A stretch of 64,000 nt of DNA. It comes from Malacoraja senta. Taxonomy: Eukaryota. Under the pieces are notes generated by a model that was given only the letters and a program-made list of their open reading frames with translations, was not told the origin of the DNA and made no database searches. The DNA is taken from NCBI GenBank assembly GCA_038087875.1, contig JAXLNO010000831.1:124001-188000 (forward strand), read 5' to 3'. The translations under genes and the position numbers were made by a program. Numbering within the stretch: position 1 is the stretch's first letter; each line of letters opens with the position of its first letter. Shown piece by piece: positions 36,690 to 58,571 of the stretch.

Positions 36690-36884
36690 TTAAATCATCT
36701 TGCGAGTGGGATTTTGTGGAACGCGCTGGTTTTATTGTCATATGTCCCAGATAGGACAATGAAATTCTTACTTGCTGCAAAACAGAAGGGAATGAAATTT
36801 GGAGGGAATTACATTTTTCACAATGATTTTTAACTGGTACAGTAAGTTTCTTCTATTATTCATAAACCATTTGCTGGAGTATGT

Positions 36885-37909
36885 AGCAATGTTACAAAAT
36901 TTTGAGATTTTAAAAATCAAGTCTGCAATTTATCCCATCAGATAAAGCATAAAAAGAAGTTTAATTTGACACCTAATTCACTTTCATATCTTCAGTATTA
37001 AAAAGGTTATGGCTATTTTCATACTCGGAAATTAGCTTCTTGTTCCCTATTGCTTTTCCATTGACTTAACACAAAAGCTGTGATCAAGGACAGTCAAAAG
37101 CCCATAACTTTCTTAAAAATTAAGAGCTTAATGAAATTTTCAGTTATTATAGATTGAAGCATTCTGAAACAAATATGAAACAATCTTACTTGGATGACCT
37201 GAAATTAAAGCATATAATTAGTTAGTTACCCAATTGTAGCTAATTACAAAATTCAATTACTAGATCTAAATATCTATCCATTTCTCAAGAAAAAGTTAAC
37301 ATTTTTAAAAAGCCTAAGTGTCCAAATAACATTCACACAAGAATTCACAATATAACATTATTTTTAAATCTCATTGTCATTAATTTATAGGCCAAATGGA
37401 AGGAATTTAGTGTTTAATTCCTGTAAATTAATGGCCATTTAAATCATCTTGCGAGTGGGATTTTGTGGAACGCGCTGGTTTGGAACGCTGCAGTTGCACT
37501 GAATTAAACCCCAATATCGGCAGGAAAAATACTGCCGGTTGGTATATTTAAATAATCACATTTTCGCAACTTGAAATTTTTATTAAAGGCATCCTAAGAA
37601 GCAAGTTTATATGAAAAAATAAACAGTGTACCTTGCCTTGTCCCGTGCATGAAATCCGTCCCCGTTGTCGGCGTTGACGGCATTTGAAGATGATTTTAAT
37701 TTTACTCTAACAATTAAATTATAATGCGCTAATTTTAATAAACTTAATAAAACGGCAGTCGAAGTGATTTTTCTTCATGAACTATTTAACCTGTTCAAGA
37801 TCGTTTAGAACAGGCTGCCGAAATATCGCATTTAAAACCCGGCCCCCTCTCAAAGGCGCCAAAGTCGCGCACACCGGCAGTGACAGAACTGCAGCTTTTG
37901 TAACATACC
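36885..37909. mobile_element. Putative non-autonomous DNA transposon of about 1 kb, superfamily unassigned
   Basis: Imperfect TIR ag(c/g)(a/t)atgttacaaaa at both ends, possible TA TSD; AT-rich left half, CpG-rich right half. Confidence 0.45.
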
Positions 37910-38029
37910 TAGAGTGTGTAGTAATATTTTCAAAACAATATTTGAAATGACATAAGACCAAGATTGCATGAGAAGTCATCTTCTGATACAGTTTAGGATT
38001 TGGCAGGAAATGCTAAAAAATATGGTTCA

Positions 38030-38325
38030 GCACGGTGGTGTAGCGGCAGAGCTGCTGCCTTACAGCGCAAGGGACCCGGGTTTGATCCTGACTACGGTTT
38101 CAGTCTGCATGGAGTTTGTACGTACTTCCCATGACCGGCACGGGTTTCCTCCGGGTGCTCCGGTTTCCTCCCACACTCCAATGACATACCAATTTGCTCA
38201 GTAAAATTCTAAATTGTCCCAAGCGTGAATAAAATAGTGATAGTGTGCGGGGATCGCTGGTCGGAGTGGATTCGGTGGGCTGAAGGACAGGTTTCTGCAC
38301 TGTATCTCTAAATTAAACTAAATAC
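38030..38325 (+). mobile_element. V-SINE (HE1-like)
   Basis: Family match. Confidence 0.8.
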
Positions 38326-39271
38326 CCAGAAAGCAAGGAAAAGTTCAAGCTTAAGGAGAGGAAATCTGAATTCACGTTCTAGACCTTCATCATTTAATTT
38401 GGCAACTAAATTGTTGCAACTTTATTTACCTCCACAGATGCTGTTGGATCATTTCCAACATGTTATATTTCTGTGTCAAGTTTATAGCACCACGTCATTA
38501 TTTTACCTTATTTTCCACTGAAAATGGAAAGGTTGTTTGATAGATTTGTAATGTAATCATAGCCTAGAACATGGGTCTTTTGCTGATTAATATTGAGTCG
38601 AGTCCAGCAATACATTCCTCAGGGCTTGAGCAATTGTGCTCTTGACCTGCTGTGAATTTATCAGAGAGAAGTGTAAGGATGTGTAAAAGTGTAGTTATGC
38701 CGGCTGAAGTATGTACATTTTTGAGATGGTAGAGAAAATGGGAAGATTAATCACTTCTGTTCAGAAGACATTTAACAAGGTTACACTTAAAGTGTTTATA
38801 AACATTTGTGAGGTAGGATCAGATTATTTGACTGGAAGGTAATTTTCCCCAAGTGAATGTGGGTGGTGGGAAAATTGAGAGAGGAGGGAAGTTCATTGGA
38901 ATGTGAGATTTACATGGAAACATAGAAAATACTGTAGGTGCAGGAGTAGGCCATTCGGCCCTTCGAGCAAGCACCGCTATTCAATATGATCATAGCTGAT
39001 CATCCAAAATCAGTACCCCGTTCCTGCTTTTTACCCATATCCCTTGATTCCATTAGCCCTAAGAGCTAAATCCAACTCTATCTTGAAAACATCCAGTGAA
39101 TTGGCCTCCACTGCCTTCTGTGGCAGAGAATACCACAGATATACAACTCTCTGGGTGAAAAAGTTTTTCCTTATCTCACTCCTAAATGGTCTACTGCTTA
39201 TTTTTAAACTATGACGCAAGTTTCTGTGTTCGATGACTTTATTCTCCTCAGTGATTTGATACACACGTTAA

Positions 39272-39582
39272 TAGTTTAGTTTAGAGATATAGAGCAGAAA
39301 CAGGCACTTTGGCCCACCGAGTCTGCGCTGGCCATCGACTCCCGCACCTTAACGCTGCCCTACACACAAACTTGGGACAATTTAATATTTACACCAAGCC
39401 CATTAACCTATAAACATGTACGTCTTTGTACGTGGGAGGAAATCGATGGTCTTGGAGAAAACCCATGCAGGTCACAGGGAGAACGTACAAACTCCATACA
39501 GACAGCACCTATAGTTAGGATCGAACCCGGGTCTCTGGCACTGTGAGGCAGTTGCTCTACCTCTACTGCACCGTGCCACCCA
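39272..39582 (-). mobile_element. V-SINE (HE1-like)
   Basis: Family match. Confidence 0.8.
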
Positions 39583-39599
39583 TAATAGTGCTGCCCAAA

Positions 39600-40500
39600 A
39601 GTCAAGAGAGTTTTATTGTCATGTGTCCCAGATAGGACAATGAATTCTTGCTTGCTGCAGCACAACAGAATATGTAAACATAATACAGAGATAAAAGTTC
39701 AGTGTGTCTATATACCATAGACCATATATATACACAATAAATAAACATATAAAGTGCAATAGGCTGTTATTGTTCAGAGTTTGTTTGATATCGTGTTTAA
39801 TAGCCTGATGGCTGTGGGGAAGAAGCTGTTCTTGAACCTGGATGTTCCAGATTTCAAGCTCCTGTGCCTTCTTCCCGATGGCAATGGAGAGATGAGTGTG
39901 TGGTCAGGATGGTGTGGGTCTTTGATGATGTTGACAGCCATTTTGAGGCAGCGACTGCGATGGATCCCTTCGATGGAAGGGAGGTCAGAGCCGAAGATGG
40001 ACTGAGCAGTGTTTACAACTTTCTTCATTCTTTTCCGCTCCTGGACGATCAAGTTGCTGAACCAAGCCACGATGCAACCAGTCAGCATGCTCTCTACTGT
40101 GCACGTGTAGAAGTCCGAGAGAGACCTCCTTGACATACCGACTCTCCGTAATCTTCTCAGGAAGTAGAGGCGCTGCTGTGCCTTTTTTATGATTGCATCA
40201 GTGTGCTGGGACCTGGAAAGATCTTCTGAAATATGCACGTCCAGGAATGTGAAGTTCTTGACCCTTTCCACCATCGTCCCGGGATATAAACGGGATTGTG
40301 GGTTCCTATCCTACCTCTTCTAAAGTCCACAATCAGTTCCTTGGTTTTACTGGTGTTGAGGGCCGGGTTATTGTGCTGGCCGATCTCACTAATATACTCT
40401 GACTCATCACCATCAGTGATTCGTCCCACAACAGTGGTGTCGTCGACGAACTTGATGATGGAGTTCGGACTATGTCTGGCTACGCAGTCATGAGTTTAGA
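39600..40500 (-). mobile_element. Rex1/Babar-type LINE 3' fragment
   Basis: KFVDDTTVVG...KAQQRLYFLRRL...LPSGRRHRSL...RFKNSFFP. Confidence 0.85.
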
Positions 40501-40916
40501 GTGAGTACAGTAGAACAGTTTTCTTATTTTTCAGTCATCAATATTCTCACTAGAATGGGCCATAAAAAAGTACTTCCTGTGGAAAAAGTTCAGTAACTTG
40601 GGGGAAAAAGATTTAAACTAATTGGTCAACTAAATTGTAAAAGACAACGTAAAAAGAATACACATGTGATCCATGAACTAGTTCAAAGAGCTGCCTTGCC
40701 TCAGGCACCATCCACTGAATGCTGCCGAGTGGTGTATTGTGGGATACTTTGTAGGATTGCATGGAATAAAAATATACATCAATCATAATTAATTTAAATG
40801 GCACAGAGGATGCCAGGTTTTATTTACACTCTATTTGTAAACACAGAACAATGCTATACAAGGCAGGATGTACAGGAAGGAACTGCTGATGCTGGTTAAA
40901 ACTCTCCAGTGAGTCC

Positions 40917-41583
40917 CTCAGCACGTACTCCTGCAGTCTGGAATGGACAGATGATGTTTTGGGTCAGACGCTTCTTCAGACTGATTGTAATAGAAAGCTG
41001 AAAAAGAGATGTGGAGCTGGGACAAAGCCTGGCAAGTGATACAGGTGATAAGACACAAAAAGCTGGAGTAACTCAGCGGAACAGGCAACATCTCTGGAGA
41101 GAAGGAATGGGTGATGTTTCGGGTCGAGACCATTCTTCAGACCCTTTGTCACCTTTTCACCTCTAGCCGTTGCCACTTACTCCACCCGTCTATTTATCAA
41201 AATCCGTTCTCTAGTCGCACCAGCTTCTCGTTTTCACCCAACAAATAGCTTACAATGGCCTGTTTCCTTTATCATCGTTACTTTTTTGCATATCTTTCAT
41301 TCATTGTTCTTTATCTCTCTACATTTTCTATATCTCTTGTTTCCCTTATCCCCAACTAGTCTGAAGAAGAATCTCGACCTGAAAAGTCACCCATTCCTTC
41401 TCTCCAGAGATGCTGCCTGTCCCACTGAGTTACTCCAGCTTTTTATGTCTTATCACCTGTATCACTTGCCAGGCTTTGTCCCAGCCCCACATCTCCTTTT
41501 CAGCTTTCTATTACAATCAGTCTGAAGAGGTGTCTGACCCAAAACATCATCTGTCCATTCCAGATTGCAGGAGTACGTGCTGA
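40917..41583. repeat. Inverted repeat with arms of about 225 bp (40917-41142 and 41359-41583)
   Basis: Both arms share the same composite junction (gatacaggtgata|agacac) and each holds two hammerhead-like motifs. Confidence 0.9.
41109..41144 (-). ncRNA. Minimal type I hammerhead ribozyme motif in a Penelope terminal repeat (one of the best-preserved copies, still imperfect)
   Basis: Minus strand reads gggt CTGAAGA a tggtctcgaccc GAAAC ATC accc: 4-bp stem I, intact CUGANGA and GAAA cores; stem II and stem III each carry one substitution. Confidence 0.6.
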
Positions 41584-43183
41584 TGGAGTCACTGAAGCAT
41601 GATGCAGTCAACACCAAGGCTCAGTGGGGGTCTACAGTCTAGGGTCCTTCGTGGCAATATATTGGGGGGCTGCAACTGGTGAAGACGCCCCTCAAACAAG
41701 GGAAGGGCTATTAACCCAGGAGGGCTATATGAGCGGCAAGGGTGCTTGATATAAGGATAGTTTGTGAACACAACCAAAAATAACCGTAATTAATCCATGT
41801 GTGGACACTGAGAATGGCAGAAACGTTGTTTGCCCTGTTCTTGTTTTGTATATATTTCATTATTCTGAATAATGTTTATTTTTGGCGGGGATAAAGTCCC
41901 TCCAGATATTACCTGACCTGCTGAGTCTCTGCAGCCCTTTGTGTTTTGCAGTGAATAGTATATATGATGTGGATGTGAATATTGGTGGTTTGATTAGTAG
42001 GTTTGCAGATGACATGTACATTGAAGAAGGTTGTCTATGGATCCAGTGGGATAGAGATTAGCTAGAGAGCTGGATGGAGCAATAGCAGAAGGAATGTAAT
42101 CCAGACATGTGTGAAGTTGTACGTGTCGGGATGTCATGTTCTGGTAGGACATAAACGGTAAGAACCTGAGGGGTGATAATATACAGAGTGTCCTTGGGTT
42201 GCAAGTTCATAGTTACCTGAAAACGCCGACAAGGGTAGACAGGAAAGCAAAGAATGCACTTTGGCATATTTGTCCACCTAGACATAGAAACATATAAAAA
42301 TTGGTGCAGGAGTAGGCCATTTGGCCCTTCAAGCCAGCACCACCATTCAATATGGTCATGGCTGATCAACCAGAATCAGTACCCTGTTCCTGCTTTCTCC
42401 CCAATCCCTTGATTTCGTTAACCCTAAGAGCTAACTCTCTCTTGAATACATTCAGTGAATTGGTCTCCGCTGCCTTCTGTGACCGAGAATTCTACAGATT
42501 CACAACACTCTAGGTGAAAAGGTTTTCCCCATCTCAATCCTAAATGGCCTACCGCTTATTCGTAAACTGTGACCCCTGGTTCTGGACTCCCCCAACATTG
42601 AGAATATTTTTCCTGCATCTAGTCTGTCAAATCCCTTATTAGTATTCGGTTTCTATCTGATATCCTCTCATCCTTCTGAATTCCAGTGAATATAAGCCCA
42701 GTCGATTCATTCTTTTATTATATGTCAGTCCTGCCATCCTGGGAATTAACCTGGTGAACTTTGCTGCACTCCTTCAATAGCAAGAATGTCCTTCTTCAAA
42801 CTAGGCGACCAAGACTGCACAAAATACTCCAGGTGCAGTCTCACCAGGGCCCTGTATAACTGAATAGACTCTGGCATCAAGTATAAGAGTTGAGAAATCA
42901 AACAAAACATTGGTTAGGCTGCACATGGAGTATTGTGTAGAGTTCTGGTCGCTCCTCTACTAACGTTACTGTGCGGGGATCACTGGTCAGCGTGGGCCGA
43001 AGGGCCTGTTTCTGCAATGTATCTCTAAACTAAAAAGGATGTGATTGCATCAAAAGTAGTGCAGAAGGGTTTTGCCAGGTTGTTGCCTGGAATAGAGGTC
43101 TGGTGTTATGTGAAGAGATTGGATAGGCTGCATTTATTCTCACTAGAATGCAGGAGTGAAATAATGAGGGCTATAGATTGTGT

Positions 43184-43630
43184 CGGAAGGATCTGCAGAT
43201 GCTGGTTTAAACCGAAGAAAGACACAAAAAGCTGGAGTAACTCAGTGGGACAGGCAGCATCACTGGAGAGAAGGAATAGGTGATATTTCGGGTCGAGACC
43301 TTTTCGGGTTGAGTCCCTTCTTCAGGAAGGAACTGCAGATGCTGGTTTACACCGAAGACAGATGTAAAATGCTAGAGTAACTCAGTGGGACAGGCAGCAT
43401 CACTGGAGAGAAGGAATGGGTGACATTTCGGGTCAACATCCTTCTTCAGGAAGGATTAACAGATGCTGGTTTACACCGAAGACAGACATAAAATGCTGGA
43501 GTATCTCAGCAGGACAGGCAGCATCTTTGGAGGGAAGGAATGAGTGATGTTTCTAAACATCATCCATTCCTTCTCTCCATAAATACTGCCTGCCCTGCTG
43601 AGTTACTCCAGTATTTTGTGTCTATCTTTG
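43184..43630. repeat. Three head-to-tail Penelope terminal-repeat units (about 124 nt) followed by an inverted copy
   Basis: Junctions ttcttcag|gaagg at 43325/6 and 43449/50; fold-back begins at about 43556. Confidence 0.85.
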
Positions 43631-44084
43631 GGGTATAGATAGGATAGAGTAATAGTCTCTTTCCCGGGGCAGTGGAGACTAGAACTGGAGATTTAAGGTG
43701 ATAGGAGAGAAATGTCAAGGGGATCTGAGCAGACGTTTCTCACCACAGTAGTTATCTGGAATGAGCTGCAGGGGAGATGGTAGAGGCAGATATAATCACA
43801 ATGTCTATAAAGCATTTGGACTTTTGATAGGAAAGTCAGGGAGGGATAAGGGCGTAATTCATGTAATTGTAGATAAACATCTCGGTCAGCATAGACAAGG
43901 TTGGGCAAATGGGCCTGTTTATATGCTGCATGATTCAGTTAATTTTAAGATTCTTTCTGTGGTTTTCATGTTGCTATCTCTATTAGCCAGAATAAGCACT
44001 GAAAATGGCTCAATCAGTCTACACCAGAGAGAACACTGTGTGAACCAAAGGAAGTGAGATATGTAAAATAGGTTCTTTAGATTT

Positions 44085-44400
44085 TTAATTTAGATACACA
44101 GCGCGGAAACAGGCCTTTCGGCCCACCAAGTCTGCACCGACCAGCGACTAACCCGCACACCAACACTATCCTATGTACACAAGGGACAATTTGACACATG
44201 CATCAAGCCAATTAACCTACATTCCTGCACGTCTTTGGAGTGGGAGGAAATCGAAGATCTCAGCGAAAATCCACGCAGGTCACGGGGAGAACGTACTAAC
44301 TCCATACAGACAGCACCCATAGTCAGGATTGAAACCGGGTCTCTGGCACTGCAAACACTATAAGGCAGCAACTCTACCGCTGTGCCACTGTGCCGCCCTT
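44085..44400 (-). mobile_element. V-SINE (HE1-like)
   Basis: Family match; further copies at about 44770-45035(-), 47260-47480(+) and 58955-59154(+, the last interrupted at its tail by the hAT). Confidence 0.8.
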
Positions 44401-45455
44401 ATTGGTAACTTTGTATGATCTTATTTTGTTAGGATGCAAATTCTATGGGAACGCTTTCTCAAAGAGATAGATAATGATGTAGAAACAACGAACTGCAGAT
44501 GCTGGTTTGTACCAAAGAGAGTCTGTGAGAGTAAACAGTTGAAAAACTAGTCTAGCAGGAAATGTGTGGTATTTGAGTAAGTGTGAATGTGGGGCGATAG
44601 GGGCACTCGCTGACAAAGGGGGATGTGGTGAACAAGTCACCAGGAGGTCATATCAAAGCAGAAGTTAAATGTTACATTGATATTTTTAGTCTGCTCTTGT
44701 TGTACTGGCATGGTGCAATCTGATTTGGACAACTTACTGTATATTGCAGCTGAAGATGATATAGATATATAGCATTGGAACAGGCTCTTCAGCCCACCAA
44801 GTCCACGCTGAACAGCGATCACCGTACAGTAGCAATATCCTATAGACTAGCAACAATTTATCATCTTTACCAAACCCTATTAAACTACAAACTCATCTTT
44901 GGAGTGTGGGAGGAAGCTGGAGCACCCAGGGAAAACCCACAGGTAGAATGTAAAAACTCCATGGTCAGGATTGAACCTGGCGGTCTCTTGAGCTGTAAGG
45001 CAGTAACTCTACCGCTGTTCCACCGTGTCACCCTTTTGTGGGGGATCATGCAGAAGCCTCCTCGTGGCGATCCACGGAACCGACGACACGATGCACTCTG
45101 AGACACGTCGGGCGACCAATTCTGTCAACATGTTGGACGACGACAGAAGCCAACAGTGAGCTACACCTCGTCTGACACACGAGCGAATGAACCCTTGTTA
45201 GACTAATCAACTAAATTGAGAGTGCAGCATAGAGAGTGCAGCACAGAAACAAGCCCTTTGACCCATCAAGTCCATACTAACTATTTTGGGACCTGATCTC
45301 TTTTTATCTTCCTGATATTTCCAATACCTACCCCTAGATTTTACTCTTTAACGACACACGGAGCAATAAATGGTGGCCTGTGAACCAAATAACTGCCGTG
45401 ACTTCCCTTTGTGGGTGGAGTAGCTGAATATCATATTTCCAAATGTTGATCAGTA

Positions 45456-45752
45456 AGGGCGGCACGGTGGGGCAGCGATAGAGTTGCTGCCTTAAAGTGT
45501 CAGAGCCCCGGGTCCGATCCTGACTATGGCTGCTGTCTGTATGGAGTTTGTACATTCTCCCCATGACCAGTGGGTTTTCGCCAAGATCTTCGGTTTCCTC
45601 CCACACTCCAAAGACGTACAGGTTTGTAGGTTAATAGGCTTGATATAAATGTAAATTGTCCTTCGTGTGTAGGATAGTGTTAATGTGCGGGGATCTGTGC
45701 AGACTTGTGCTGAAGGGCCTGTTTCCACACTGTATCTCTAAACTAACCTAAA
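45456..45752 (+). mobile_element. tRNA-derived V-SINE (HE1-like), full length
   Basis: A-box-like ggcacggtgg..cagcg and B-box-like gggtccgatcc head, V-domain-like tctccc..tgggtttt...ggtttcctcccacactcc, CR1-like tail ending in (taaac)n. Confidence 0.85.
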
Positions 45753-46121
45753 ATAATCTAATTAAGCTTGACATTTAGAATCGTGTACAGCATAGAAACA
45801 GGCCCTTCAGCCCAGCTTATCTATGCCAGCCAAGATGCCCCATCTACCCTTGACCCACCTATCTATATTTTAGCTTAGTTTAATTTATTATTAATGTGAC
45901 GTGTACTGTTTTACAGTGAAAATGTTTCTTGTGTGCTATCCAGTCAGTGAAAAGACTACATTACAATGAAGCCGTTCACAATCTATAGATACAGGTTAAA
46001 GGGTATCATGTTTAGTGCAATGTAAATCCAATTGGTGTTTTGCCGATTTCCCTCCAAACCTTTCCTATCCATAGAAATGTCTATTACTTGACAATAATTG
46101 TATTATTTTCTTTGTGTCTAG

Positions 46122-46380
46122 GGCCTCACACACTCCTATTACTACACCCTGAACCACGGGAGTACTCATCTACCAGAATATAGTGTTGTGGGTGTTCTGG
46201 ACGGTTGTGAGATACTGTATTATGACAAAAACATGGTCATTACAGTTCCAAGACAGAAATGGATGGCGGCTGCATTTGACAGGAATTACTGGGTAACAAA
46301 TACGGTCTCTGAAACTGGTTTCCATGGAATCATCAAAGGGCAAGTCGATGAATGGATGCGGCGGCAGAACGAAACAGCAA
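46122..46380 (+). pseudogene. MHC class I alpha-1 domain exon with a frameshift at codon 6
   Basis: Acceptor ttttctttgtgtctag| and donor a|gttagt (phase 1-1). Reads GPHTL-x-YYYTLNHGSTHLPEYSVVGVLDGCEILYYDKNMVITVPRQKWMAAAFDRNYWVTNTVSETGFHGIIKGQVDEWMRRQNETA. Class I hallmarks: H3, Y7, LDG, YYD, PRQxW, YW (59-60), R84, N86 glycan site. Length is 259 nt (261 expected); the spliced frame stops at TAG 46181-46183. Confidence 0.88.
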
Positions 46381-48514
46381 GTTAGTTCATTCATTTCAAT
46401 ACATTTGGAGTGTGATCAATGTTCATAAAAAAACATCTCAAAGAAATTTCTCGCTGTGCCAGAGACCCAGGTTTGATCCCGACTACATGTTCTCCCTGTG
46501 AACACAGATATTTCCTCCAGGTGCTCCGGTTTCGTCCCATATCTTGAAAACGTGAGAGTTTGTAGGTTAATTGGGCTCTGTAAATTACTCTTGTGTGCTG
46601 AGAATGGGTGAGAAAGTGGGATTACATAGATGTGTAGGAAGGAACTGAAGATGCTGGTTTACAGCAAAGATAGGCACAATGTGCTGGAGTAACTCAGCGG
46701 GACAGGCAGCATCTCTGGATACAAGGAATGGATGACTTTTCAGGTCAAGACCCTTCCTCAGACAGTGTTTCCCCTGACTTACTCCAGCATTTTGTGTCCA
46801 TTTTGGGATAACATAGAACTAGTGTGAAAGATGATCGATGGTTGGCATGGAATTGGTGGGCAGAATGGCCCGTTTCCATGCTAAGTCACTAACCTAAGAA
46901 CTGCAGATGCTGCAAATGTGAAATAAAAACCAAAAATGCCATTGTCTGATGGCTTCATTGTCAGTTTATCACCATGGAAACCTGTCATTACCTTATTAGT
47001 GATACCCGCTATGTCCAACCATGCCTCCCACTCCTGTCTGTAACTTACACATTCTCACAATTCTGAAGCATTAATTTTGTTTCTCTTTCCATAGGTTCTG
47101 TTGAACATGCTGTGTGTTCCAGCATTTTACAAATCATTGAAATGTTGGCAGCTTTTTGAATGGTTAAAATCCCTTGCGTACCTCACCAATTGTTTTTACT
47201 TTTATTGACAAATGTTGAAAGAAAAGTTGAGTGAAATATTTAAAGGGTAACGTAAATGGCATTGTGGTTCAGCCATAGTGATACTGCCGTAGTGCCAGAG
47301 ACCCAGGGTTGATCCTGGCCTCAGGTGCTGTCTGTACATAGTTTGTACGTACTCCCCGTGACCTGCGTGGGCTTTCCCCGGGTGCTCCAGTTTCCTCCCA
47401 CACTCCAAGCCTGTATGCCAAAGGGGATCACTGGTCACTGTGGACTCTAAGGGCTGTTTTCGTGCTATATCTCTAAATTATCTTGGGCACCAATTGTAAA
47501 GTAGGCTGTCCAAATCCGTCTGCACCACACTTGTATATCCATATAATTTGCAATTGGACATGTTTTGTATTGTAAATCAATAAGTCCTATCACCATTACT
47601 GTGTTAATTCAATGACATTCGTAGTGTACCATTGAACAAAGCAGGACTAGGCATGAGGGGACCATCGTGAGGTGGGGGTGGGGGGACAAAGGAGGACCTG
47701 GTGTGGGAGACTTTCTAACTTTGTCGGTGCCCTTTATGTGAAGAATCTTGACATACGTTGGGTTTACAAAACAAAGACTTTCACTGTGACTTGTCACATG
47801 TCACTATAAAGTATCATTCATTCATGATTAATTATTTCTGAAAACATTGCTTTTTGTTACCTCTTTGGTTACACATTAAACAAATTATATTATTAATCTT
47901 TAACTGGACTAAAACAGGGTGAGGGTACAAACAGGGAACAATACATCAAAATATTATGCACTGGGCATAATTTCTATCAATTTTCCACATCTTGCAATAT
48001 TTATTATTATTTTCAAATTATATGTGAATACATGTGAATGACGTTTATTACATTATCATCTGATTCATTGAACCATGTTTATTGAATCATATTGCCTTCA
48101 AAAATGTTTTTTATATTTGCATTATTTATGGTGCACATATTATCTGCAACATTGTTATGTTTATGAGATTGATGAGCATATTGTCGGGGCTCAAGGGTGT
48201 GAACAAGAGGGAGAGATTGGGCAAGCCAGGGCTTTATTCCATGGAGCACAGGAGGCTGAGGGGTGATCATATAGGGGTGCTTAAAATCATGAGGGGAATT
48301 GATTGAGTGTATGCCCAGAGCCTTTTACCCAGAGAAGGAGAATAAAATAACCAGAGGACATGGGTTTAATGTGAGAGGGGGAAGATTTAATTGGAACTTG
48401 GGACAATCTTTGTGCTCAGAGAGTGGTCAGCATATGGAATGACCTGCCAGAGAATGGAGTTGCGGCAGGTACAATAACAATATTTAAAAGACACATGGAC
48501 AGGGACATGCATAG

Positions 48515-48992
48515 GTAGATAAAAGTCCTGGAGAAACTCAGCGGGTGAGGCAGCATCTATGGAGCGAAGAAAATAGGCAACGTTTTGGGTCGAAAACCCT
48601 TCTTCAGACTGATGTGAGGGTGGGGGGAGTGGGGCCGGTGGGGGGGGGCAGGAAGAAGAAAGGAAGAGGTGGAGCCAGTGGGCTGAGGGAGAGCTGAGAA
48701 GGGGAGGAGAAAATAAGGACTACCTGAAATTTGGGAAGTCAATGTTCATACCGCTAGGGTGCAAACCGCCCAAGCGAAATATGAGGTGCTGCTCCTCCAA
48801 TTTACGGTGGTCCTCACTCTGGCCATGGAGGAGTCCGAGGGCAGAAAGGTCGGATTTGGAATGGGAGGGGGGAGTTGAAGTGCTGATCCACCGGGAGATC
48901 AGGTTGGTTGTTGCGAACCGAGCGGAGGCGTTCGGCGAAACGATCGCCAAGCCTGCGCTTGGTCTCACCGATGTAGAGCAGCTGACATCTAG
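48515..48992 (-). mobile_element. Penelope-like GIY-YIG fragment with terminal repeat
   Basis: SDLSALGLLHGQSEDHRKLEEQHLIFRLGGLHPSGMNIDF. Confidence 0.85.
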
Positions 48993-49904
48993 AGAGAAAC
49001 GTTTTGAATGATGTCTACCCATTGCAGGGTAAATGGGACTAGCTTAAATGGGGTATCTTGATTAGCTTGGACAAGTTGGGCCAAAGGGCTTGTTTCCCTG
49101 CTGTGTGACTCTCTATGACTGCTTTATAGCAAAGAGCGCTGCTGCCTCACAGCTCCAGTGATCCGGGTTCAATCATCTCCAGTGCAGTCTGTGTGGAGTA
49201 TAAGCATTCTCCCTGTGACAATGTTTGTTCTCCAGTTTCCTCCCACATACCAAAATGTGCTGAATTAGTAGATTAAGCCACCGCTGCAAATAGGTGGATT
49301 TGTGGCATTGATAGAAATGAGAAAGATCCGTTTTGGGGGAAATTAGTGTTGGAATGGTTTTGTTCTCTGGGCTAGAGTGGGCTCAGGAGGCTGAAAGGCC
49401 TCTTTCTCTGTCACATGGAATTATGGGCAGTTATTTATCCTTGAACTGCCTTCTTTCTCATTTTAGTCAACAGTGTAAAATTGAAGTAATTGACTGGATT
49501 GAACTATTTAACAATTGTAGATGAAAGGAAGAGCAGAGGTTGCTTTCCTCCACACACAAAGTGCTGAGGAACTCAACGGGTCAAGCGGCATCTTTGGAGA
49601 ACATGGGAAGGCAGATATTTCGGGTGAGGATCCTACTTCAGACTGAAGTTGGGTCACGTTAGAACATGCTTTGTACTCACACTCGCAGTCCAGTGTTAGT
49701 TTTCAAGTTTTTTTTGTTATTCACAGCTTGTAGTTGTTACATATTCAGCAGAGAGAAGATGAGACAAACTAAAGCACCTGCAAAACACAACTAAAAGACC
49801 GCAGAAAGAAGCTTGAAAAGAAGGCTCTTATCTAAACAACGTACTTTCAAGAGAATTAGATTTAGCTCTTAAGGCTACAGGAATCAAGGGATATGGGGGA
49901 AAAG

Positions 49905-51375
49905 ATTAGTTAAAACAAATGTAGGTCCCTTGCAGTCAGAAACAGGGGAATTGATCATGGGGAACAAGGCCATGGCAGACCAATTGAATAACTACTTTGG
50001 TTCTGTCTTCACTAAGGAAGACTTAATTAACTGCCGGAAATAGCAGGGGGCCGGAGGTCAAATGAGATGGAGGAACTGAGTGAAATCCAGGTTAGCCAGG
50101 AAGTGGTGTTAGGTAAATTGAATGGATTAAAGGCTGATAAATACCCAGGGCCAGATAGGCTGCATCCCGGAGTACTTAAGGAAGTAGCCCCAGAAATAGT
50201 GGAAGCATTAGTGATAATTAGGGAGAGAGAAAACGGGGAATTACAGACCAGTTGGTCTAACGTCAGTAGTGGGGAAACTGCTAGAGTCATTTATTAAAGA
50301 TGGGATAGCAGCACATTAGGACAATGGTGAAATCATTGGACAAAGTCAGCATGGATTTATGAAAGGTAAATCATGTCTGACGAATCTTATAGAATTTTTC
50401 GAGGATGTAACTAGTAGAGTGGATAAGGGAGAACCAGTGGATGTGTTATATCTGGACTTTCAGAAGACTTTCGACAAGGTCCCACATAAGAGATTAATAT
50501 ACAAACTTAAAGCACACGGTTATGGGGGTTCAGTATTGATGTGGATAGAGAACTGGCTGGCAGACAGGAAGCAAAGAGTAGGAGTAAACTGGTCCTTTTC
50601 AGAATGGCAGGCAGTGACTAGTGGGGTACCGCAAGGCTCAGTGCTGGGACCCCAGCTATTTACAATATATATTAATGATTTGGACGAGGGAATTGAATGC
50701 AACATCTCCAAGTTTGCGGATGACACGAAGCTGGGGGGCAGTGTTAGCTGTGAGGAGGGTGCTAGGAGGCTGCAAGGTGACTTGGATAGGCTGGGTGAGT
50801 GGGCAAATGCATGGCAGGTGCAGTATAATGTGGATAAATGTGTGGTTATCCACTTTGGTGGCAAAAACAGGAAAGTAGACTATTACCTGAATGGTGGCCG
50901 ATTAGGAAAAGGGGAGATGCAACAAGACCTGGCTGTCATGGTACACCAGTCATTGAAAGTAGGCATGCAGGTGCAGCAGGCAGTGAAGAAAGCGAATGGT
51001 ATGTTAGCATTCATAGCAAAAGGATTTGAGTATAGGAGCAGGGAGGTTCTACTGCAGTTGTTCAGGGTCTTGGTGAGACCACACCTGGAGTATTGCCTAC
51101 AGTTTTGGTCTCCTAATCTGAGGAAGGACATTCTTGCCATAGAGGGAGCACAGAGAAGGTTCACCAGACTGATGCCTGGGATGTCAGGACTTTCATATGA
51201 AGAAAGACTGGATAGACTCGGCTTGTACTCGCTAGAATTTAGAAGATTGAGGGGGGATCTTATAGAAACTTACAAAATTCTTAAGGGGTTGGACAGGCTA
51301 GATGCAGGAAGATTGTTCCCGATGTTGGGGAAGTCCAGAACAAGGGGTCACAGTTTAAGGATAAAGGGGAAATCT
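49905..51375 (+). mobile_element. CR1 LINE RT fragment
   Basis: KGKSCLTNL...YLDFQKTFDKVPH...SGVPQGSVLGP...KFADDTKL; about 340 open codons, 3' end lost. Confidence 0.92.
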
Positions 51376-51850
51376 TTTCAAGCTGCTTTCTGCAGTCTCT
51401 CAGTTGTTCTGCAGATCCTTTACATTCTCTCGTCTTCGTGTTTTCAAGAAACACCACAAATAGCCGAATGTATACTAATTATAGAAAGATAGAAAAATAG
51501 GCACAGGAGTAGGCCATTCGGCCATTTGAGCCAGCACCGCCATTCAATATTATCATGCCTGCATCTAGAATCAGTACCCCATTCCTGCATTTAGGGCCAT
51601 GCTCCTCAGGGGGAGGGGGGGTGTCGTGGCTGTGACGGTGGGTGTCGAGGAGAGGCGTGTACATGGAGCGATTCCGGACGAGCTTACCCCCGCTCAGTCA
51701 GAATTGTTCATAGGGCCCACATCGACCGCCTGCTCTTTTTTTTTTTTTTTCCGTAAATGTTTTTTTTTTAATTAGATTTTTAAACAAATGTACAATTTAC
51801 AAGGAAGGGTAGAAAGCTCACACAATTTAAAAAACATTTACACAAAATTA

Positions 51851-54800
51851 TCAAATTAAAATATTAACATTTTTATCTATAATATATTCAACCTCCTGCG
51901 GTGACCAGCGTTCACAGAAGGCCTCCACAGTCCCCGTGGACACCGCGTGTTCCCTCTCTAGGGACACGCGGGCACGGACGTAACCCCGGAAAAGGGGCAG
52001 GCAGCCGACCGCTGTGCGGCCATCGACCGCCCGCTGCCTGGACCCGCGAATGGCCATCTTGGCCAGGCCCAGGAGCAGTCCGACAGGGAGACCCCCTCCT
52101 CCCTCCCGACCCTCCCCCCTCTGTACCGGGTGCCCATAGATTAATAGCGTTGGACTAAAATGTAGCCAAAACTTGAGGAGCAGCCCTTTCAGATACTCGA
52201 ACAGGGGCTGCAACCTCTCGCACTCTATATACACGTGGAACACGGTCTCTTCCTCACCGCAGAAATGACACGCAGGGGAAGAGTCCGTGAACCGGCTCAA
52301 GTACTATTACAGGCCACGGCTTTGTGCAAAACTCTCCACCCCAGGTCCCCGATGTAAAGGGGGAGGACTCCCTTGTAGAGAGACCTCCACTGAGGACCGC
52401 TCCCCTCGTCAGGTGGTAACACGGACCGCCAGGGTGTGTCTGGATGGAAGACGAGGGCGAGGAAGTGGAGAGTGTGCAAGAGCAGCCTGTACAGTACGCG
52501 CCTCTCCGCGCCACGGAATGGCACACTGGGCATCTCAAAAAGGCGGCTCATGTTGCATGGGGCCGGCTCTCGGGGAGGGTCCTGGGCCATGGGCCCTATG
52601 AACAATTCTGACTGAGCGGGGGTAAGCTCGTCCGGAATCGCTCCATGTACACGCCTCTCCTCGATACCCACCGTCACAGCCACGACACCCCCCTCCCCCT
52701 GAGGAGCATGGCCCTGGCTGAAGGTGACCAAATTCCTGGCCTTCAGGAGTTCACGGTAAAAGCCAGGCAACTCCCGCCTAGCGCGTCGACTCATGCCCGC
52801 TACCGGGAGCCGGGAGCCCTCCTGAAGGCACCGTCCCTGACGGAAAAAGTACGTCGCCAGCACGTGCCATTTAGGAGGGTAGTCCGAGTAGACGTACCTC
52901 CGCAGGGTCCTGAGTCGGTGAGCCGCCACCTGGGTACGAATACAGACCAGCGCCTGACCACCCTCCTCCAACGGGAGACTCAGAACCCCAGCAGAGACCC
53001 AGTGGTTCCTCTCCCCCCAGAAGAAGTTGACCAATCTCCTCTGTAACATGGTTATAAAATAAGAGGATGGGACCATAGTGGCCATCCGGTACCACAGCAC
53101 AGAGGCCACCAGCTGGTTTATAACTACAGCCCTGCCCCGGTAAGAGAGCACACCAAGTAGGCCTGACCAACGTCCCAGCCGGGCGACCACTTTCGCCTCC
53201 AGCTCCTGCCAGTTCGCCGGCCACCCCTCCTCAGCGGGACTCAGGTAGACCCCCAGATAGAGGTGGTGCGTGGTACTCCACGCAAAACCTGCCATCTCCT
53301 CCGGCAGGGAGTCCACCTGCCACCCACCCATCAAGAGACCAGAACACTTCCCCCAGTTGATCCTGGCGGAAGATGCAGCCGAGAAAACCTGCTGGCACTC
53401 ACGCATCCTCCGCAGGTCACCAGGGTCGGTGAACATCAGAAGGACATCATCGGCGTAGGCCGAGAGAACCACCTCCATCCCCGGCCCCGGTAAAGCCAGG
53501 CCTGTCAACCGCCTCCGGAGAAGGCACAGGAAAGGCTCGACACAGATGGAATACAGCTGGCCGGACATGGGACATCCCTGACGAACCCCCCTCCCAAAGG
53601 GAATGGGGGCCAACAAAGAGCCGTTGACCTTAACAAGGCATTCTGCAGCAGTATATAACAATCGGACCCAGGCCACAAAATGCGGTCCAAATCCGAACGC
53701 CTGCAGAGTCCCAAGAAGGTAGTCGTGCTCCACCCTGTCAAACGCCTTCTCCTGGTCGAGGGGGAGAAAGGCGACCGACTGACCAGCCCCCTGGGACAGA
53801 TGGATCAGGTCCCGGAGCAGATGGATATTGTCCTGGATGGACCGGCCCGGGACTGTGTACGACTGGTCAGGGTGGATCACCTGGGACAGCACGGGACCCA
53901 GGCGATTCGCCAATGCCCGTGCAAAGACTTTATAGTCCGTGCTGAGGAGAGAGACCGGGCGCCAGTTCTTCAAAAGGCGAAGATCGCCCTTCTTGGGCAG
54001 CAGGACAACAACTGCCCTGCACCAAGAGAAAGGCATCTCCCCGGTCGCCAGGCTCTCCCCCAGGACCTTCATATAGTCGCCCCCCCAGGACATCCCAGAA
54101 GGCTCTAAGGTACTCCACAGTCAGCCCATCCAGCCCTGGAGACTTGCCCCTCCTGAGCTGGTGCAGGGCACCAGTCAACTCCTCCAGAGTTAGGGGATCA
54201 TCCAGGTGTTCAGCCACATCATTGCACACAGCGGGTAAGCCCTCCCACAGGACTTCTTTTGCCTCCCCACTCGATGTGCCAGCCGAGAACAGAGTCCTGT
54301 AGAACGACCGAACTGAGGCACCAATGCTCTCTGGATCTGTGACAGAGGAGCCATCATCCGCAAGCAACTCTACAAGCTGCCTGCGGGCTCCTCGCCCCTT
54401 CTCCAGAGAAAAGAAAAAGGGGAAGGCGCGGTCCAGGTCGTGCAACATCTGGACCCGCGACCTCACATACGCACCCCGGGACCTCCTAAGCTGCAAGTCC
54501 CTCAGTGCTCCCTTCTTCTCCTGGTATTCCTCCCACTCACACGAAGCCCCACCAGTCTGATCCAGACGAGCCTCCGAGTCGAGTAACTCTCTCTCAAGCC
54601 GTCCGATCTCGGATTCCCGCCCCTTGGTCGACCCCCTCGCATAGTCCTGGCAAAACTGATGGACGTAGACCTTCCCCACGTCCCACCACTGCCTTAGGGA
54701 AAGGAAAAGCCCCTGCCTCTCTCTCCACCTCGCCCAGAACTGCCTGAATGAATCCCGGAATCGGCAATCCTCCAACAGCTGGCTATTAAAATGCCAGTAC

Positions 54801-55528
54801 GCGGACCCTGCCCGTGTGCGCGCTGGGATAAAGTCCACTCGCAAAAGGCAATGGTCCGAGCATGGCGCCGGCTGCATGGAGGCCGCCGAAACACAGGAGA
54901 CATAGGCCTTGGACACGTATAAATGATCAATACGGGAACCACCACCCTCAAACCTGTACGAGAAGGCGTTGGAGTCAGGATGGAAATTCCGCCATGCATC
55001 TACCAGCTCAAAAGAGTCCCCCATCTCCCTCAAAGTCTTCACTGCTCCCGGGTCACGCTGAACGCCAGAGCGATCTCTTGTCTCGAGGGCACAATTAAAA
55101 TCTCCCCCAAGGAAAACACACTCCCCACGGTCGATAGTGTTCAACAACGTGGTCACTTCCCTTGTTAAGCGCGTCTGCATTGCGCCGATCTTGGGGGCGT
55201 ACACATTAACGAAGTGTAATGGCACACCATCCAAGCGCACGGCCAGATACAGCAAACGGCCTGGTACAACCTCCTGCACTTTGAGGATCTCCGGCTGGAA
55301 AGACGGGGCCAACAGGAAGGCTACTCCACTCGATTTGGAGCTGAGATGACTCATGTAGACCCCCCCTTCCCACTCCAGGAGCCATGTGGGTTCATCACTA
55401 GCCACAGTGTGTGTTTCCTGCAGGAAGCTCACCGCATACCTCCCGTCCCTGAGCACTGAGAGATGGTGAAACCTACGGAGAGACCCCCTGCCCCCATTGA
55501 TATTCAGGCTGGCTATAGTGAGCTTCAT
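51851..55528 (-). pseudogene. Tx1 ORF2 (APE-RT), frameshifts at about 54080-54086 (G7 run) and about 52303
   Basis: Track ORFs 53930..55528, 52297..54093 and 51851..52300 form one continuous pol with two 1-nt shifts. Confidence 0.9.
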
Positions 55529-57632
55529 TTTGAAAGTACACTAGATCTTTTACCCGTCCCCGGTGATGGATTGGAGCCTCCCCTACCCTTCTTCCCTCTC
55601 TTTAGGGCCTTAAAAAGCTCTTGGAACTGGCGCCTCTCATTTCTTACTAGCCCCGCCTCATTCCCCTTCTTCTGAAGGATGGCATGAATGGACTGCATGG
55701 GCGCCATCAGGTCCGACCAGCGGTCAACAGCCAAATCCACCTTATTCCTACTCCCTCCAGTTTCCTTTAAGAACTTCCGAAGTTCCCAGACTTCGACAAG
55801 TCGAGACACGGGGCCACGGGTGGAGCAGTCCGTCAACTCACTGTCAACGGACTCCGCGTACCCTTCCTCCTCGCACTCAATGTCCGAGCCCGAGTCCAGA
55901 AGGTTACTACTCTCAGCCGCCTCGCTCACCCCTCCCTGTGAGGTGGGCATTCCAGCCACATCACACAGTCCCTCCTCTGTCACCATCCCACCCCCAGGAT
56001 CAGTGACAGGGGCAGGTACCAGTGCCTCTGACCGCGGCAAACTATCTGACAATTGGCCAGTCTCCTGCACGCTCCCATCGCCCTCTGTAACCGGATTGGG
56101 AACAGTGAAGTCAGAGCAAGTCTCCAGGCCTTGCTGTAAGCGGGTCTGTCTGGAGTCCGACCTAAGGACACGATCCAAAATGATCTTGCCCTCCTCCGCA
56201 CCCAGGGTATCCGCCCCTGCACCGTCACCCAGAGAGTCCCCGTCCCCCACCACCAGGTGAATCACCCCACTGTGGCCCTCAGGGGCCGATGTTACTGGAG
56301 TCTCCCCTGCTCCCTCAACCAGTGGGGCATCACACCCCTCAACTGGGCTTGTAGCCTCAACGGGGAGCTCATGTTGGGGACCCACCCCCTCACCCAAGTC
56401 CCCCCTTCAGGCTGCCCCTGGTCATCCACTAAGCTAGCAGACGTGTTTTCTGGGGGAACAGCCCCCAAGAGCAATATATCTCCACTCTCAGGTGGTCCCA
56501 GACCTACAGAGGCATCCTCCCCCTCAGAGGAAATGTGCCCTGGGTACCCCACCTCAACAGGAGGGGAAGGCTCCCCTTCAGGTTGCCCCTGAACTTCAGG
56601 GCCCTTCTCTGTATCGGAGGACCCATGCCTCCTCCTCTTCGAACCACTGGCGTACGGTGGTACGGTGAGCTCCATTGCAGAAGCCTCTACCTCCACACTA
56701 CCGTCTATCTCAGAGGCTAGCATGAAATTATCTGCTGCCTGGGGTCCCGCTTGGAGGTGATCATCTTCTAGGGGATCAGCCTGGAGATGTTTCTTCTTTT
56801 TCTTGACTTTCCTCCCCTGCTGATGCTCCCAAACCTTCCCATCCACCCGACGCACTTCTCCGGCATCCACCGCCACAGGTGCGGGACATGGGGGTGGTGG
56901 GGGGATAGGGGTTGGGGGTAGGGGAGTAAAGCCTTCACGGGCCACCGTGGTAAAACCAGCAGCCCCAGATGGGCCAGTAGTGCTTTCCCTTGCCATCGTG
57001 GTTGAACTGGCAGCCCGGGTCCTGGGACAATTCTTGCGAAAATGCTCCACCTTTTTGCAAGCGTGACAACGCACTTGGCCCGCATTCCAGAACACGCGAT
57101 AGGAGAAATCATCCACCTCCACCTCAAAACTCCCCTCCGTGTCCGTCCCCTGTGCCAACTGTATATACACGCGACGCTTGAACGTATATATATGCTGCAT
57201 CTCAGGATCGTCAAACCTGTACAACAGTTTGGTGAGCCCTGACCGCACCTCCCCCAGCTTCCTTACATGTGGGAGCAGGAGCGCATCCGGAACAAAAGTG
57301 GGAACGTTGGACAGAATGACCGGCAAAACGGGACCCCCCCATGGGTCCACCGCCGCGAAAACCCCCCCTGCTGTTACCCCCCTTTCCAGAGCCAGAGCCA
57401 GAGCCACCGCCTGTTCAGTCTTTAGTAGAACCACAACCTTCCCACTGACCACCGCGCCCGAGACTATGGCTTTCTTGCCAACAGTCTCACCCAACGCATC
57501 TAGAAAGGCCTTTAAGGGCAGGTTGCTCTGCATGTACATTTTTACACCATATGTGCGCCCCATCAACTCGTGGCCCTCAGTCTCGGAGACTGCCGACCGT
57601 GCAACAGCTGCATAACTCTGAGGGGCCGCCAT
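55525..57632 (-). pseudogene. Tx1 ORF1 (gag-like zinc knuckle), one frameshift in a G6 run at 56400-56405
   Basis: Track ORFs 56292..57758 and 55525..56397 join across the homopolymer; MAAPQS start at 57632. Confidence 0.85.
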
Positions 57633-58345: not shown

Positions 58346-58571
58346 GGGCCTGTCCCACTTTGGCCGTCAGTTCCGCGACAGACCGTTGGCGCGCGAAGAT
58401 TTCGTTCACTACAAAATTATTGGAGCCCCGCGCAATGTCGCGCACAACTACATACCCCTCCGCGCTTCTCAGTGAGACCGGTCCCGCGCGGCCATACAGT
58501 GCCCGTGAGCCTCAACGCGACCACGAGGTCACATAATTTGTGTGCCAAGGACAAGTAAGTGGGACAGGCCC
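58346..58571. mobile_element. MITE with perfect 15-bp TIR GGGCCTGTCCCACTT
   Basis: 58346-58360 versus 58557-58571; shares its terminal motif with the 9168-9485 MITE. Confidence 0.75.

What the first reader, a model, noticed from the sequence alone, without database searches (positions are those of the whole stretch)
46122..46380. Hidden MHC class I alpha-1 exon of a divergent lineage that keeps the peptide-anchor residues
Seen: a 259-nt phase 1-1 exon encoding a class I alpha-1 fold with H3, D of LDG, YYD, PRQxW and the N86 glycan site (NET). The alpha-1 anchor positions Y7, Y59 and R84 are retained, but the helix (VTNTVSETGFHGIIKGQVDEW) is unlike classical UAA as I recall it, and there is an extra Cys (LDGC). 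Known: chondrichthyans have several class I lineages (UAA, UBA, UCA, UDA, UEA), and UDA is reported to keep most anchors while being non-classical. Inference: a UDA-like, or possibly unassigned, non-classical class I locus.
Basis: partly seen in the sequence, partly recalled or inferred. Interest (0 to 1): 0.75.

Follow-up and report, generated by a model that had tools for sequence, protein, structure and literature searches.

The report
Frameshifted skate UGA class I exon
This is a real exon for the first groove domain of UGA, an already described CD1-like (reportedly lipid-binding) non-classical MHC class I gene of sharks and rays, but in this skate assembly the exon lacks two bases and so cannot be read through from its signal-peptide exon.

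Summary
The exon at 46122-46380 (+) is real. It has an AG acceptor and a GT donor and encodes a class I alpha-1 domain (E 4e-36 to PDB 9CH4; E 1e-40 to a little skate protein).

The lineage is UGA, not UDA-like and not unassigned. 9CH4 is titled 'shark nonclassical MHC class I, UGA'. In a maximum-likelihood tree the window's domain falls inside a skate clade, a batoid clade and a shark-plus-ray clade, each with 100/100 support.

RefSeq already annotates orthologues in Amblyraja, Leucoraja and Rhinoraja. This scan has also met UGA copies on other pieces of this genome.

I found the signal-peptide exon 29.3 kb upstream, at 16767-16839. The alpha-2 exon and later exons lie beyond the window.

Orthologous exons are 261 nt, and the window lacks 2 nt at 46135/46136. 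Read from the leader, the frame stops at 46181-46183.

The intron-1 donor is also GC instead of GT. Contigs from four public runs, two about 99% identical to the window, carry the intact form.

This copy is therefore a recent null allele or pseudogene, or less likely an assembly slip. The alpha-1 anchors are kept, but in orthologues three alpha-2 anchors are replaced by A, F and L. It is a new member of a known kind, of modest interest.

The parts
16767..16839 (+). Exon 1: start codon and signal peptide (24 codons plus 1 base, phase 1). It reads MREVVREMMLFILLSFFRVQGAEA, plus the first base of a Gly codon.
   Evidence: tblastn with the Leucoraja and Amblyraja proteins, translation and sequence, and alignment to the Amblyraja leader exon. 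Position -2 of the signal peptide is E here and L in the other skates.
16840..16841 (+). Intron-1 donor is GC (CAG|GCAAGT). Amblyraja and both Rhinoraja loci have GT here.
   Evidence: GC donors in this context can work (general knowledge). Its use here was not tested.
16840..46121 (+). Intron 1, 29,282 nt, filled with LINE and other retroelement remnants.
   Evidence: The window is colinear with Amblyraja locus L001 at about 85-93% nucleotide identity. ORFs in the intron carry reverse-transcriptase domains.
46122..46380 (+). Exon 2: the alpha-1 domain of a UGA-lineage class I heavy chain. It is 259 nt here and 261 nt in orthologues.
46135..46136 (+). Site of the 2-nt deletion, with an adjacent substitution, that shifts the frame relative to exon 1.
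   Evidence: Alignments to Amblyraja and Rhinoraja. Contigs of runs X1 and X3 have 'AT' inserted behind 46135 plus C>G at 46135. X14 has 'GA' inserted behind 46134. X1 and X2 also show T>C at 46139, and the X2 contig stops aligning at 46136.
46181..46183 (+). First in-frame stop (TAG) when the exon is read in phase from the leader exon.
   Evidence: Translation of the frame starting at 46124, with the sequence.
46371..46379 (+). N-E-T glycosylation sequon, equivalent to N86 of classical class I.
46381..64000 (+). Start of intron 2, which runs off the end of the window. No alpha-2, alpha-3 or transmembrane exon lies in the window. A GC-rich LINE at about 52.3-57.8 kb has no match in the Amblyraja locus fetched.
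   Evidence: tblastn found no further class I exons. Colinearity with L001 stops at 48405 and only repeat matches follow. Unchecked earlier scan notes place the alpha-2 exon 1815 nt beyond the window end.

Best explanation
The stretch is exon 2 (the alpha-1 domain) of the skate orthologue of UGA. UGA is a non-classical, MHC-linked class I heavy-chain gene conserved in sharks and rays.

The gene starts in this window with a signal-peptide exon at 16767-16839. It is interrupted by a 29.3-kb intron 1 and continues beyond the window end.

In an intact copy, alpha-1 supplies four floor strands and one helix of the ligand groove. The mature protein would pair with beta-2-microglobulin. It carries a C-terminal Y-x-x-hydrophobic tail (DYQNI in skates) that would route it through endosomes. 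The literature reports that it binds lipids much as CD1d does.

Shown here: the identity, orthology, gene structure and anchor pattern. Inferred or taken from the literature: beta-2-microglobulin pairing, endosomal routing and lipid binding.

In this assembly the exon has lost 2 nt just after the fifth codon. A transcript spliced from the leader would end after about 20 residues of mature sequence. The intron-1 donor has also changed from GT to GC. This copy is therefore most likely a recently inactivated allele or young pseudogene (about 55%). Otherwise it is an intact gene with a local assembly error (about 35%).
For: Identity:
- 9CH4_A matches at E 4e-36 and is about 65% identical over 80 residues. 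Its title is 'shark nonclassical MHC CLASS I, UGA'.
- The zebra shark protein P0172 is about 88% identical to 9CH4 and sits in the same 100/100 clade as the window's domain. The skate and batoid sub-clades are also 100/100.

Orthology and synteny:
- The window is colinear with the Amblyraja radiata gene locus at about 90% nucleotide identity, from upstream of the leader through exon 2.

Gene structure:
- The leader exon was found by tblastn and alignment.

Frameshift:
-.
- Public-run contigs, two runs about 99% identical to the window, carry the intact form.

Past constraint:
- Alpha-1 dN/dS is 0.38 against Amblyraja and 0.18-0.21 against Rhinoraja.
- The exon is 95% identical to Amblyraja, while the surrounding 1.6-1.8 kb is 88-90% identical.

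Function:
- A Y-x-x-hydrophobic tail is present in 12 of 16 family members.
- Classical anchors 123, T143 and Y159 are replaced by A/I, F and L in both the Amblyraja orthologue and 9CH4.
- PMC12562908 states that UFA and UGA are CD1-like, and that crystal structure and mass spectrometry suggest they bind lipids comparable to those of CD1d.
- PMC10751288 places such genes in the elasmobranch MHC-Ib cluster.
Against: - Only two of the gene's exons are in the window, so the integrity of the rest is unknown here.
- No RNA evidence was obtained for this species. The nature of runs X1 and X2 is unclear: their depth is too high for whole-genome shotgun data, and introns are covered.
- The organism of X1 and X2 is coded, so 'same species' rests only on about 99% identity.
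- Logan contigs drop rare variants, so the absence of the deleted form in those runs does not prove it is absent.
- The lipid-binding claim rests on a review citing a personal communication and on the PDB title. I could not read a primary paper.
- My AlphaFold model of the orthologue was poor in the alpha-1 helix (mean pLDDT 68, below 50 over residues 61-90). It gives no independent view of the groove.
Confidence: 0.85

Rival explanations
1. The gene is intact and functional in the animal, and the 2-nt gap at 46135/46136 is a local assembly or consensus error.
For: - All four public runs laid on the exon show the 261-nt form or are consistent with it.
- The rest of the exon is under purifying selection, with dN/dS of 0.18-0.38.
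- Splice sites and the leader ORF are intact.
Against: - The change is not a homopolymer slip. It is a 2-nt loss with an adjacent substitution in non-repetitive sequence.
- The window also carries other private changes nearby: Q>L at 46216, the GC donor, and L>E in the signal peptide. That looks like a genuinely different haplotype or copy.
- Earlier scan notes report other decayed UGA copies in this genome (not checked by me).
Confidence: 0.35
2. It is a UDA-like or still unnamed class I lineage that presents a conserved set of peptides.
For: Y7, Y59 and R84 are kept in alpha-1. K146, W147 and Y171 are kept in the orthologues' alpha-2.
Against: - The nearest structure is named UGA.
- Orthology with that lineage has 100/100 support.
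- Three anchors are replaced by hydrophobic residues.
- A CD1-type sorting tail is conserved.
- No chimaera member appeared among the relatives found. From my memory of Almeida et al. 2020, UDA is present in chimaeras. I could not read that paper here.
Confidence: 0.03
3. It is an orphan exon relic with no gene around it, like other class I scraps noted in this genome.
For: No alpha-2 or alpha-3 exon lies in the 17.6 kb downstream within the window. The exon is frameshifted.
Against: - A matching leader exon sits at the syntenic place 29 kb upstream.
- The whole stretch is colinear with the 78-kb Amblyraja gene, whose intron 2 is 11 kb before the extra repeat sequence seen here.
- Unchecked notes place alpha-2 1.8 kb, and the tail exon 23 kb, beyond the window end.
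Confidence: 0.04

Closest known systems
Shark UGA (PDB 9CH4, 'Crystal structure of shark nonclassical MHC CLASS I, UGA', released 2026-03-18)
   Same: - The alpha-1 domain is about 65% identical over 80 residues, and the Amblyraja orthologue is about 60% identical over the whole ectodomain.
- Both have the LDGC cysteine, the GFHGIIKGQ helix motif and the sequon at the same place.
- Both show the same anchor pattern: Y7 and Y59 kept, F143 and L159.
- Both fall in the same 100/100 clade, using the zebra shark proxy that is 88% identical to 9CH4.
   Different: - This is the skate member, not the shark one.
- R rather than K at the position-84 equivalent.
- No second cysteine in the alpha-1 helix; several galeomorph sharks have one (W-E-x-C-T).
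- In this assembly the exon is frameshifted.
RefSeq skate genes annotated 'class I histocompatibility antigen, F10 alpha chain-like': Amblyraja radiata XP_032898133.1, Leucoraja erinacea XP_055521885.1, Rhinoraja longicauda XP_078272153.1 and others
   Same: - 84-94% amino-acid identity in alpha-1.
- Same exon boundaries, same leader, same long introns, and a colinear locus.
   Different: The other skates have a 261-nt exon and a GT donor. The window has 259 nt and a GC donor.
CD1 (lipid-presenting class I-like molecules of tetrapods)
   Same: - Reported lipid binding (PMC12562908).
- A tyrosine-based endosomal sorting tail. The skate tail ends R-R-D-Y-Q-N-I, which from general knowledge resembles the human CD1b tail.
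- Low polymorphism and low copy number are claimed.
   Different: - By sequence the family is nearer to classical class I and MR1 than to CD1. The best non-UGA PDB sequence hits are MR1 and fish or bird classical class I.
- It keeps 6 of the 9 classical anchors.
- It is MHC-linked.
- Orthology with CD1 is not shown.
Chicken YF1*7.1 (class I-like molecule that presents lipids and lipopeptides)
   Same: Both have a class I-type sequence with a partly hydrophobic groove, and YF1*7.1 is among the top structural matches (Z 17.8-17.9).
   Different: About 31% identity. It is a bird-specific lineage with no orthology.
Chondrichthyan UDA (Almeida et al. 2020)
   Same: Both are non-classical, MHC-linked and conserved across elasmobranchs.
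   Different: It is a different named lineage. From memory, UDA keeps 8 of 9 anchors and occurs in chimaeras, whereas this family keeps 6 of 9 and no chimaera member was found. I had no named UDA sequence to test directly.

Membership tests
MHC class I heavy chain (alpha-1 domain) | Significant match to the class I alpha-1/alpha-2 profile and to solved class I structures | tested here: met
   Pfam PF00129 at E 8e-5. The score of 22.7 bits is below the whole-protein cut-off of 28.3, as expected for half a domain pair. There are 45 PDB class I chains at E<1.
MHC class I heavy chain (alpha-1 domain) | Phase 1-1 exon of a multiple of 3 nt, joined in frame to a leader exon | tested here: not met
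   The exon is 259 nt. Reading in phase from 16839 runs into a stop at 46181-46183. The orthologous exons are 261 nt and meet this feature.
UGA lineage of elasmobranch non-classical class I | Groups with the sequence of the structure deposited as UGA, apart from other class I lineages | tested here: met
   9CH4 is the top hit by 27 orders of magnitude over the next PDB hit, 6LUP at E 2.6e-9. The clade has 100/100 support with a shark proxy 88% identical to 9CH4. Within the batoids, the skates and then the rays group as the species tree would predict.
UGA lineage of elasmobranch non-classical class I | Family motifs in alpha-1 (LDGC, GFHGIIKGQ, sequon N-x-T at the end) | tested here: met
   All are present in the window and conserved in alignment A1.
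UGA lineage of elasmobranch non-classical class I | Alpha-2 with F at 143 and L at 159, and a Y-x-x-hydrophobic cytoplasmic tail | not testable with these tools
   These exons lie beyond the window. They are met in the Amblyraja, Leucoraja and Rhinoraja orthologues and in 9CH4. Earlier unchecked notes report both features downstream of this window.
UGA lineage of elasmobranch non-classical class I | MHC linkage, next to a second divergent CD1-like class I gene | tested here: inconclusive
   No other gene lies in the window. In Leucoraja the orthologue (P0157) and the sister-lineage gene P0005 share one 127-kb contig. An unchecked note reports a divergent class I gene 18 kb upstream of this window.
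UGA lineage of elasmobranch non-classical class I | Binds lipid ligands | not testable with these tools
   Literature statement only (PMC12562908, which cites a personal communication).
   The orthologue P0154 aligned to nurse shark UAA keeps 6 of 9. Positions 123, 143 and 159 are A, F and L. Caveat: the criterion comes from memory, and the alpha-2 residues come from orthologues, not from this window.
Classical UAA | Nests among classical class I sequences | tested here: not met
   About 30% identity to nurse shark UAA 6LUP. It falls outside all other class I sequences in both trees.
CD1 | Sequence membership of the CD1 family | tested here: not met
   No CD1 chain appears among the 60 best PDB sequence hits shown for the orthologue. 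Chicken CD1-1 appears only as a general fold match, with Z 17.7 and 24% identity.

The most novel reading that the evidence does not exclude
The syntenic, ancestral UGA locus of this skate is a naturally inactivated copy, with a 2-nt frameshift and a weakened GC donor, in a group where UGA has become multicopy. Rhinoraja has at least 9 distinct UGA-like proteins, and other copies and remnants are noted in this genome. CD1-like genes in skates would then evolve by birth and death rather than as the 'single- or low-copy' genes described so far.
Probability: 0.35. Interest if true: 0.4.

Novelty: new member of a known kind. Interest (0 to 1): 0.25.

Why it matters
UGA and its sister UFA are the oldest candidates for CD1-like lipid presentation. 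They push that function back to the origin of jawed vertebrates.

A further skate orthologue adds a data point for conservation. It shows which alpha-1 residues are fixed, such as LDGC and GFHGIIKGQ. It also shows that the locus keeps its 70-80 kb, repeat-filled structure.

The frameshift, if real, would show that this supposedly conserved gene can be lost or can vary in copy number within skates. That matters for anyone using a skate as a model for lipid presentation.

For genome annotation, the practical point is that this exon will be missed or flagged as low quality because of the 2-nt gap.

Tried and rejected
- Alpha-2, alpha-3 and transmembrane exons: tblastn with four family proteins found none in the window.
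- A weak alpha-1-like hit at 26712-26909 (25% identity, E 0.08) is part of a retroelement tail and not a class I exon.
- A GPR139-like gene, fused to UGA in some Leucoraja models, has no match in the window.
- A literature search for '9CH4' returned only unrelated hits. Three further searches for a primary UGA/UFA paper found only the 2023 MBE paper and a 2025 review.
- The two J Immunol papers on UDA and UEA are not held in the library, so the UDA criteria could not be verified.
- The supplementary tables of PMC10751288 label genes only as 'MHC-Ib', without lineage.
- The AlphaFold model of the Amblyraja orthologue had mean pLDDT 68, below 50 in the alpha-1 helix. I used it only to obtain PDB titles, not to judge the groove.
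- An ISRE-like motif search found nothing near the promoter and no excess in the window.
- An Rfam scan of the window found nothing.
- Read laying was limited to one call, so the leader exon and its GC donor could not be checked against reads.

Full report
**The observation**

The stretch 46122-46380 on the + strand is bounded by a pyrimidine-rich tract and AG (46120-46121) and by GT (46381-46382). The frame that starts at 46122 is open for 86 codons. The other two frames have stops.

It matches Pfam MHC_I (E 8e-5) and 45 solved class I chains. By far the best is 9CH4_A, at E 4e-36 and about 65% identity over 80 residues; nurse shark classical UAA 6LUP follows at E 2.6e-9. Among 1.84 billion representative proteins the best hit is a Leucoraja erinacea protein at E 1e-40 and 84% identity. 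The exon is therefore real and not a chance ORF.

An exon of 259 nt cannot be phase 1-1. tblastn with the skate proteins found the signal-peptide exon at 16767-16839, 29.3 kb upstream. It ends with one base of a Gly codon, so it is phase 1.

Entered in that phase, exon 2 reads G-P-H-T-L. That matches the orthologues' GPHTLIYYYT only as far as the L. The frame then shifts and reaches TAG at 46181-46183.

DNA alignments show why. In Amblyraja radiata (locus L001) and in two Rhinoraja longicauda loci (L002, L003) the exon is 261 nt. The window lacks 2 nt between 46135 and 46136 and has a substitution next to the gap.

The window has two more derived changes:
- The intron-1 donor is CAG|GCAAGT, where all three comparators have GT.
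- Position -2 of the signal peptide is E instead of L.

**Evidence from public reads**

Contigs of four public runs were laid on 45400-47100. Runs X1 and X2 are from one coded organism, and their unique pieces are about 99% identical to the window.
- X1 carries 'AT' inserted behind 46135, C>G at 46135 and T>C at 46139. That gives CTG ATC TAC, which reads L-I-Y and keeps the frame intact.
- X2 shows the same T>C, and its contig stops aligning at 46136.
- The more distant runs X3 and X14 also carry two extra bases.

The window also differs from all of these runs at 46216 (Q>L). It differs from three of them (X1, X2 and X3) at 46362, a synonymous site that X14 does not cover.

There are caveats. 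These are assembled contigs that drop rare variants. Their depth is too high for whole-genome shotgun data. The organism is coded. They show that the intact form exists in a near-identical source. They do not show that the deleted form is an error.

**What it is**

A VIA-align comparison of an AlphaFold model of the Amblyraja orthologue returned the PDB titles. 9CH4 is 'Crystal structure of shark nonclassical MHC CLASS I, UGA', released 2026-03-18.

The Amblyraja protein is about 60% identical to 9CH4 over the whole ectodomain (E 8.6e-118). A zebra shark protein is about 88% identical to it.

A word-indexed search found 17 relatives in skates, sawfish, stingrays, manta and seven shark orders, and none in chimaeras.

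In a maximum-likelihood tree of 47 class I proteins the window's alpha-1 lies in three nested clades, each with 100/100 support:
- a skate clade of 8 rows;
- a batoid clade of 13 rows;
- a shark-plus-ray clade of 20 rows that includes the 9CH4 proxy.

A Leucoraja gene (P0005) that shares a contig with the Leucoraja orthologue is the sister lineage, at 97/90. An alpha-1-only tree of 119 domains gives the same placement.

The window is colinear with the 78-kb Amblyraja gene, from 7 kb upstream of the leader through exon 2, at about 90% nucleotide identity. It is about 85% identical to Rhinoraja. It is therefore the syntenic orthologue in another rajid skate.

**Constraint**

Alpha-1 dN/dS is 0.38 against Amblyraja and 0.18-0.21 against Rhinoraja. 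The exon is 95% identical to Amblyraja, against 88-90% for the surrounding 1.6-1.8 kb. The domain was under purifying selection for most of its history, so any inactivation is recent.

**How it most likely works**

In an intact copy the exon encodes the alpha-1 half of the groove of a heavy chain that pairs with beta-2-microglobulin.

Aligned to nurse shark UAA, the family keeps Y7, Y59, R84 (K in 9CH4), K146, W147 and Y171. It replaces position 123 by A or I, T143 by F, and Y159 by L. This holds in both the skate orthologue and 9CH4.

The cytoplasmic tails end in a tyrosine motif in 12 of the 16 aligned sequences: DYQNI, DYQTI, AYENI, DYNTV and similar. This is the type of signal that sends CD1 through endosomes (general knowledge).

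[quoted passage not shown] It adds that crystal structure and mass spectrometry suggest they bind lipids comparable to those of human CD1d (PMC12562908, citing a personal communication). The 2023 MBE paper places such genes in the elasmobranch MHC-Ib cluster (PMC10751288). Lipid binding and trafficking are therefore taken from the literature and from sequence motifs. They were not shown here.

**Status of this copy**

With a frameshift, a GC donor and several private substitutions, I put:
- about 55% on a real, recent null allele or young pseudogene;
- about 35% on an intact gene with an assembly error;
- the remainder on other readings.

The change is not a homopolymer slip, which argues mildly against an error. 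Earlier notes of this scan, which are unchecked AI notes, report the following:
- an alpha-2 exon 1.8 kb beyond the window end;
- a YQNI tail exon 23 kb beyond the window end;
- a divergent class I gene 18 kb upstream of the window;
- other UGA copies and remnants on other pieces of this genome.

I reached the UGA assignment independently, through the PDB title and the trees.

**Comparison and novelty**

This is a new species' member of a named lineage with a solved structure. RefSeq already annotates it in three other skates. It is not UDA-like, not classical and not a new lineage.

The only mildly new elements are the lesion in the syntenic copy and a side observation. Rhinoraja longicauda has at least nine distinct UGA-like proteins on one chromosome, with two loci 13 Mb apart. 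That sits uneasily with 'single- or low-copy'.

Noticed in passing
L002 and L003 (Rhinoraja longicauda CM130181.1, 39.66 Mb and 26.42 Mb): Rhinoraja longicauda has at least 9 distinct, more than 90% identical UGA-like proteins on one 41.5-Mb chromosome, and two of the loci lie 13 Mb apart. UGA looks multicopy in this skate, unlike the 'single- or low-copy' description in the literature.
   Followed up: partly
window 45457-45855 and 46426-46824: The exon is flanked on both sides by very high-copy short repeats. Contig depth there runs up to millions in all four runs, including distant organisms, which suggests SINE-like elements.
   Followed up: no
window 52297-57758 (- strand): A GC-rich (0.57-0.60) LINE with long open frames lies in intron 2: 598 aa with a reverse-transcriptase domain, 532 aa upstream of it, and a 488-aa ORF1-like frame. 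It has no match in the Amblyraja locus fetched, so it may be a young insertion.
   Followed up: partly
window 61570-63272 (+ strand): A run of ORFs (124, 144, 91 and 103 aa) looks by eye like a decayed hAT/ZBED-type transposase. The first piece has no Pfam hit.
   Followed up: no
window 10159-11004 (- strand): A 281-aa ORF has a weak GIY-YIG match (E 3e-4), which may be a Penelope-like element remnant upstream of the gene.
   Followed up: no
Leucoraja erinacea proteins P0152, P0153, P0155, P0169 (not in the window): RefSeq isoforms X1-X4 of LOC129716032 fuse the UGA leader, alpha-1 and alpha-2 with a GPR139-like seven-helix receptor. This is probably a read-through gene model. The receptor has no match in this window.
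   Followed up: partly
Leucoraja erinacea P0005 (same 127-kb contig as P0157): This is the sister lineage of UGA, about 39% identical, with extra cysteines in alpha-2 and an insertion before alpha-3. It may be the skate UFA. An earlier unchecked note reports a similar gene 18 kb upstream of this window.
   Followed up: partly
alignment A1, alpha-1 helix: Several galeomorph sharks, and 9CH4, have a second cysteine in the alpha-1 helix (W-E-x-C-T) that could pair with the LDGC cysteine. Skates lack it, which leaves the LDGC cysteine unpaired.
   Followed up: no
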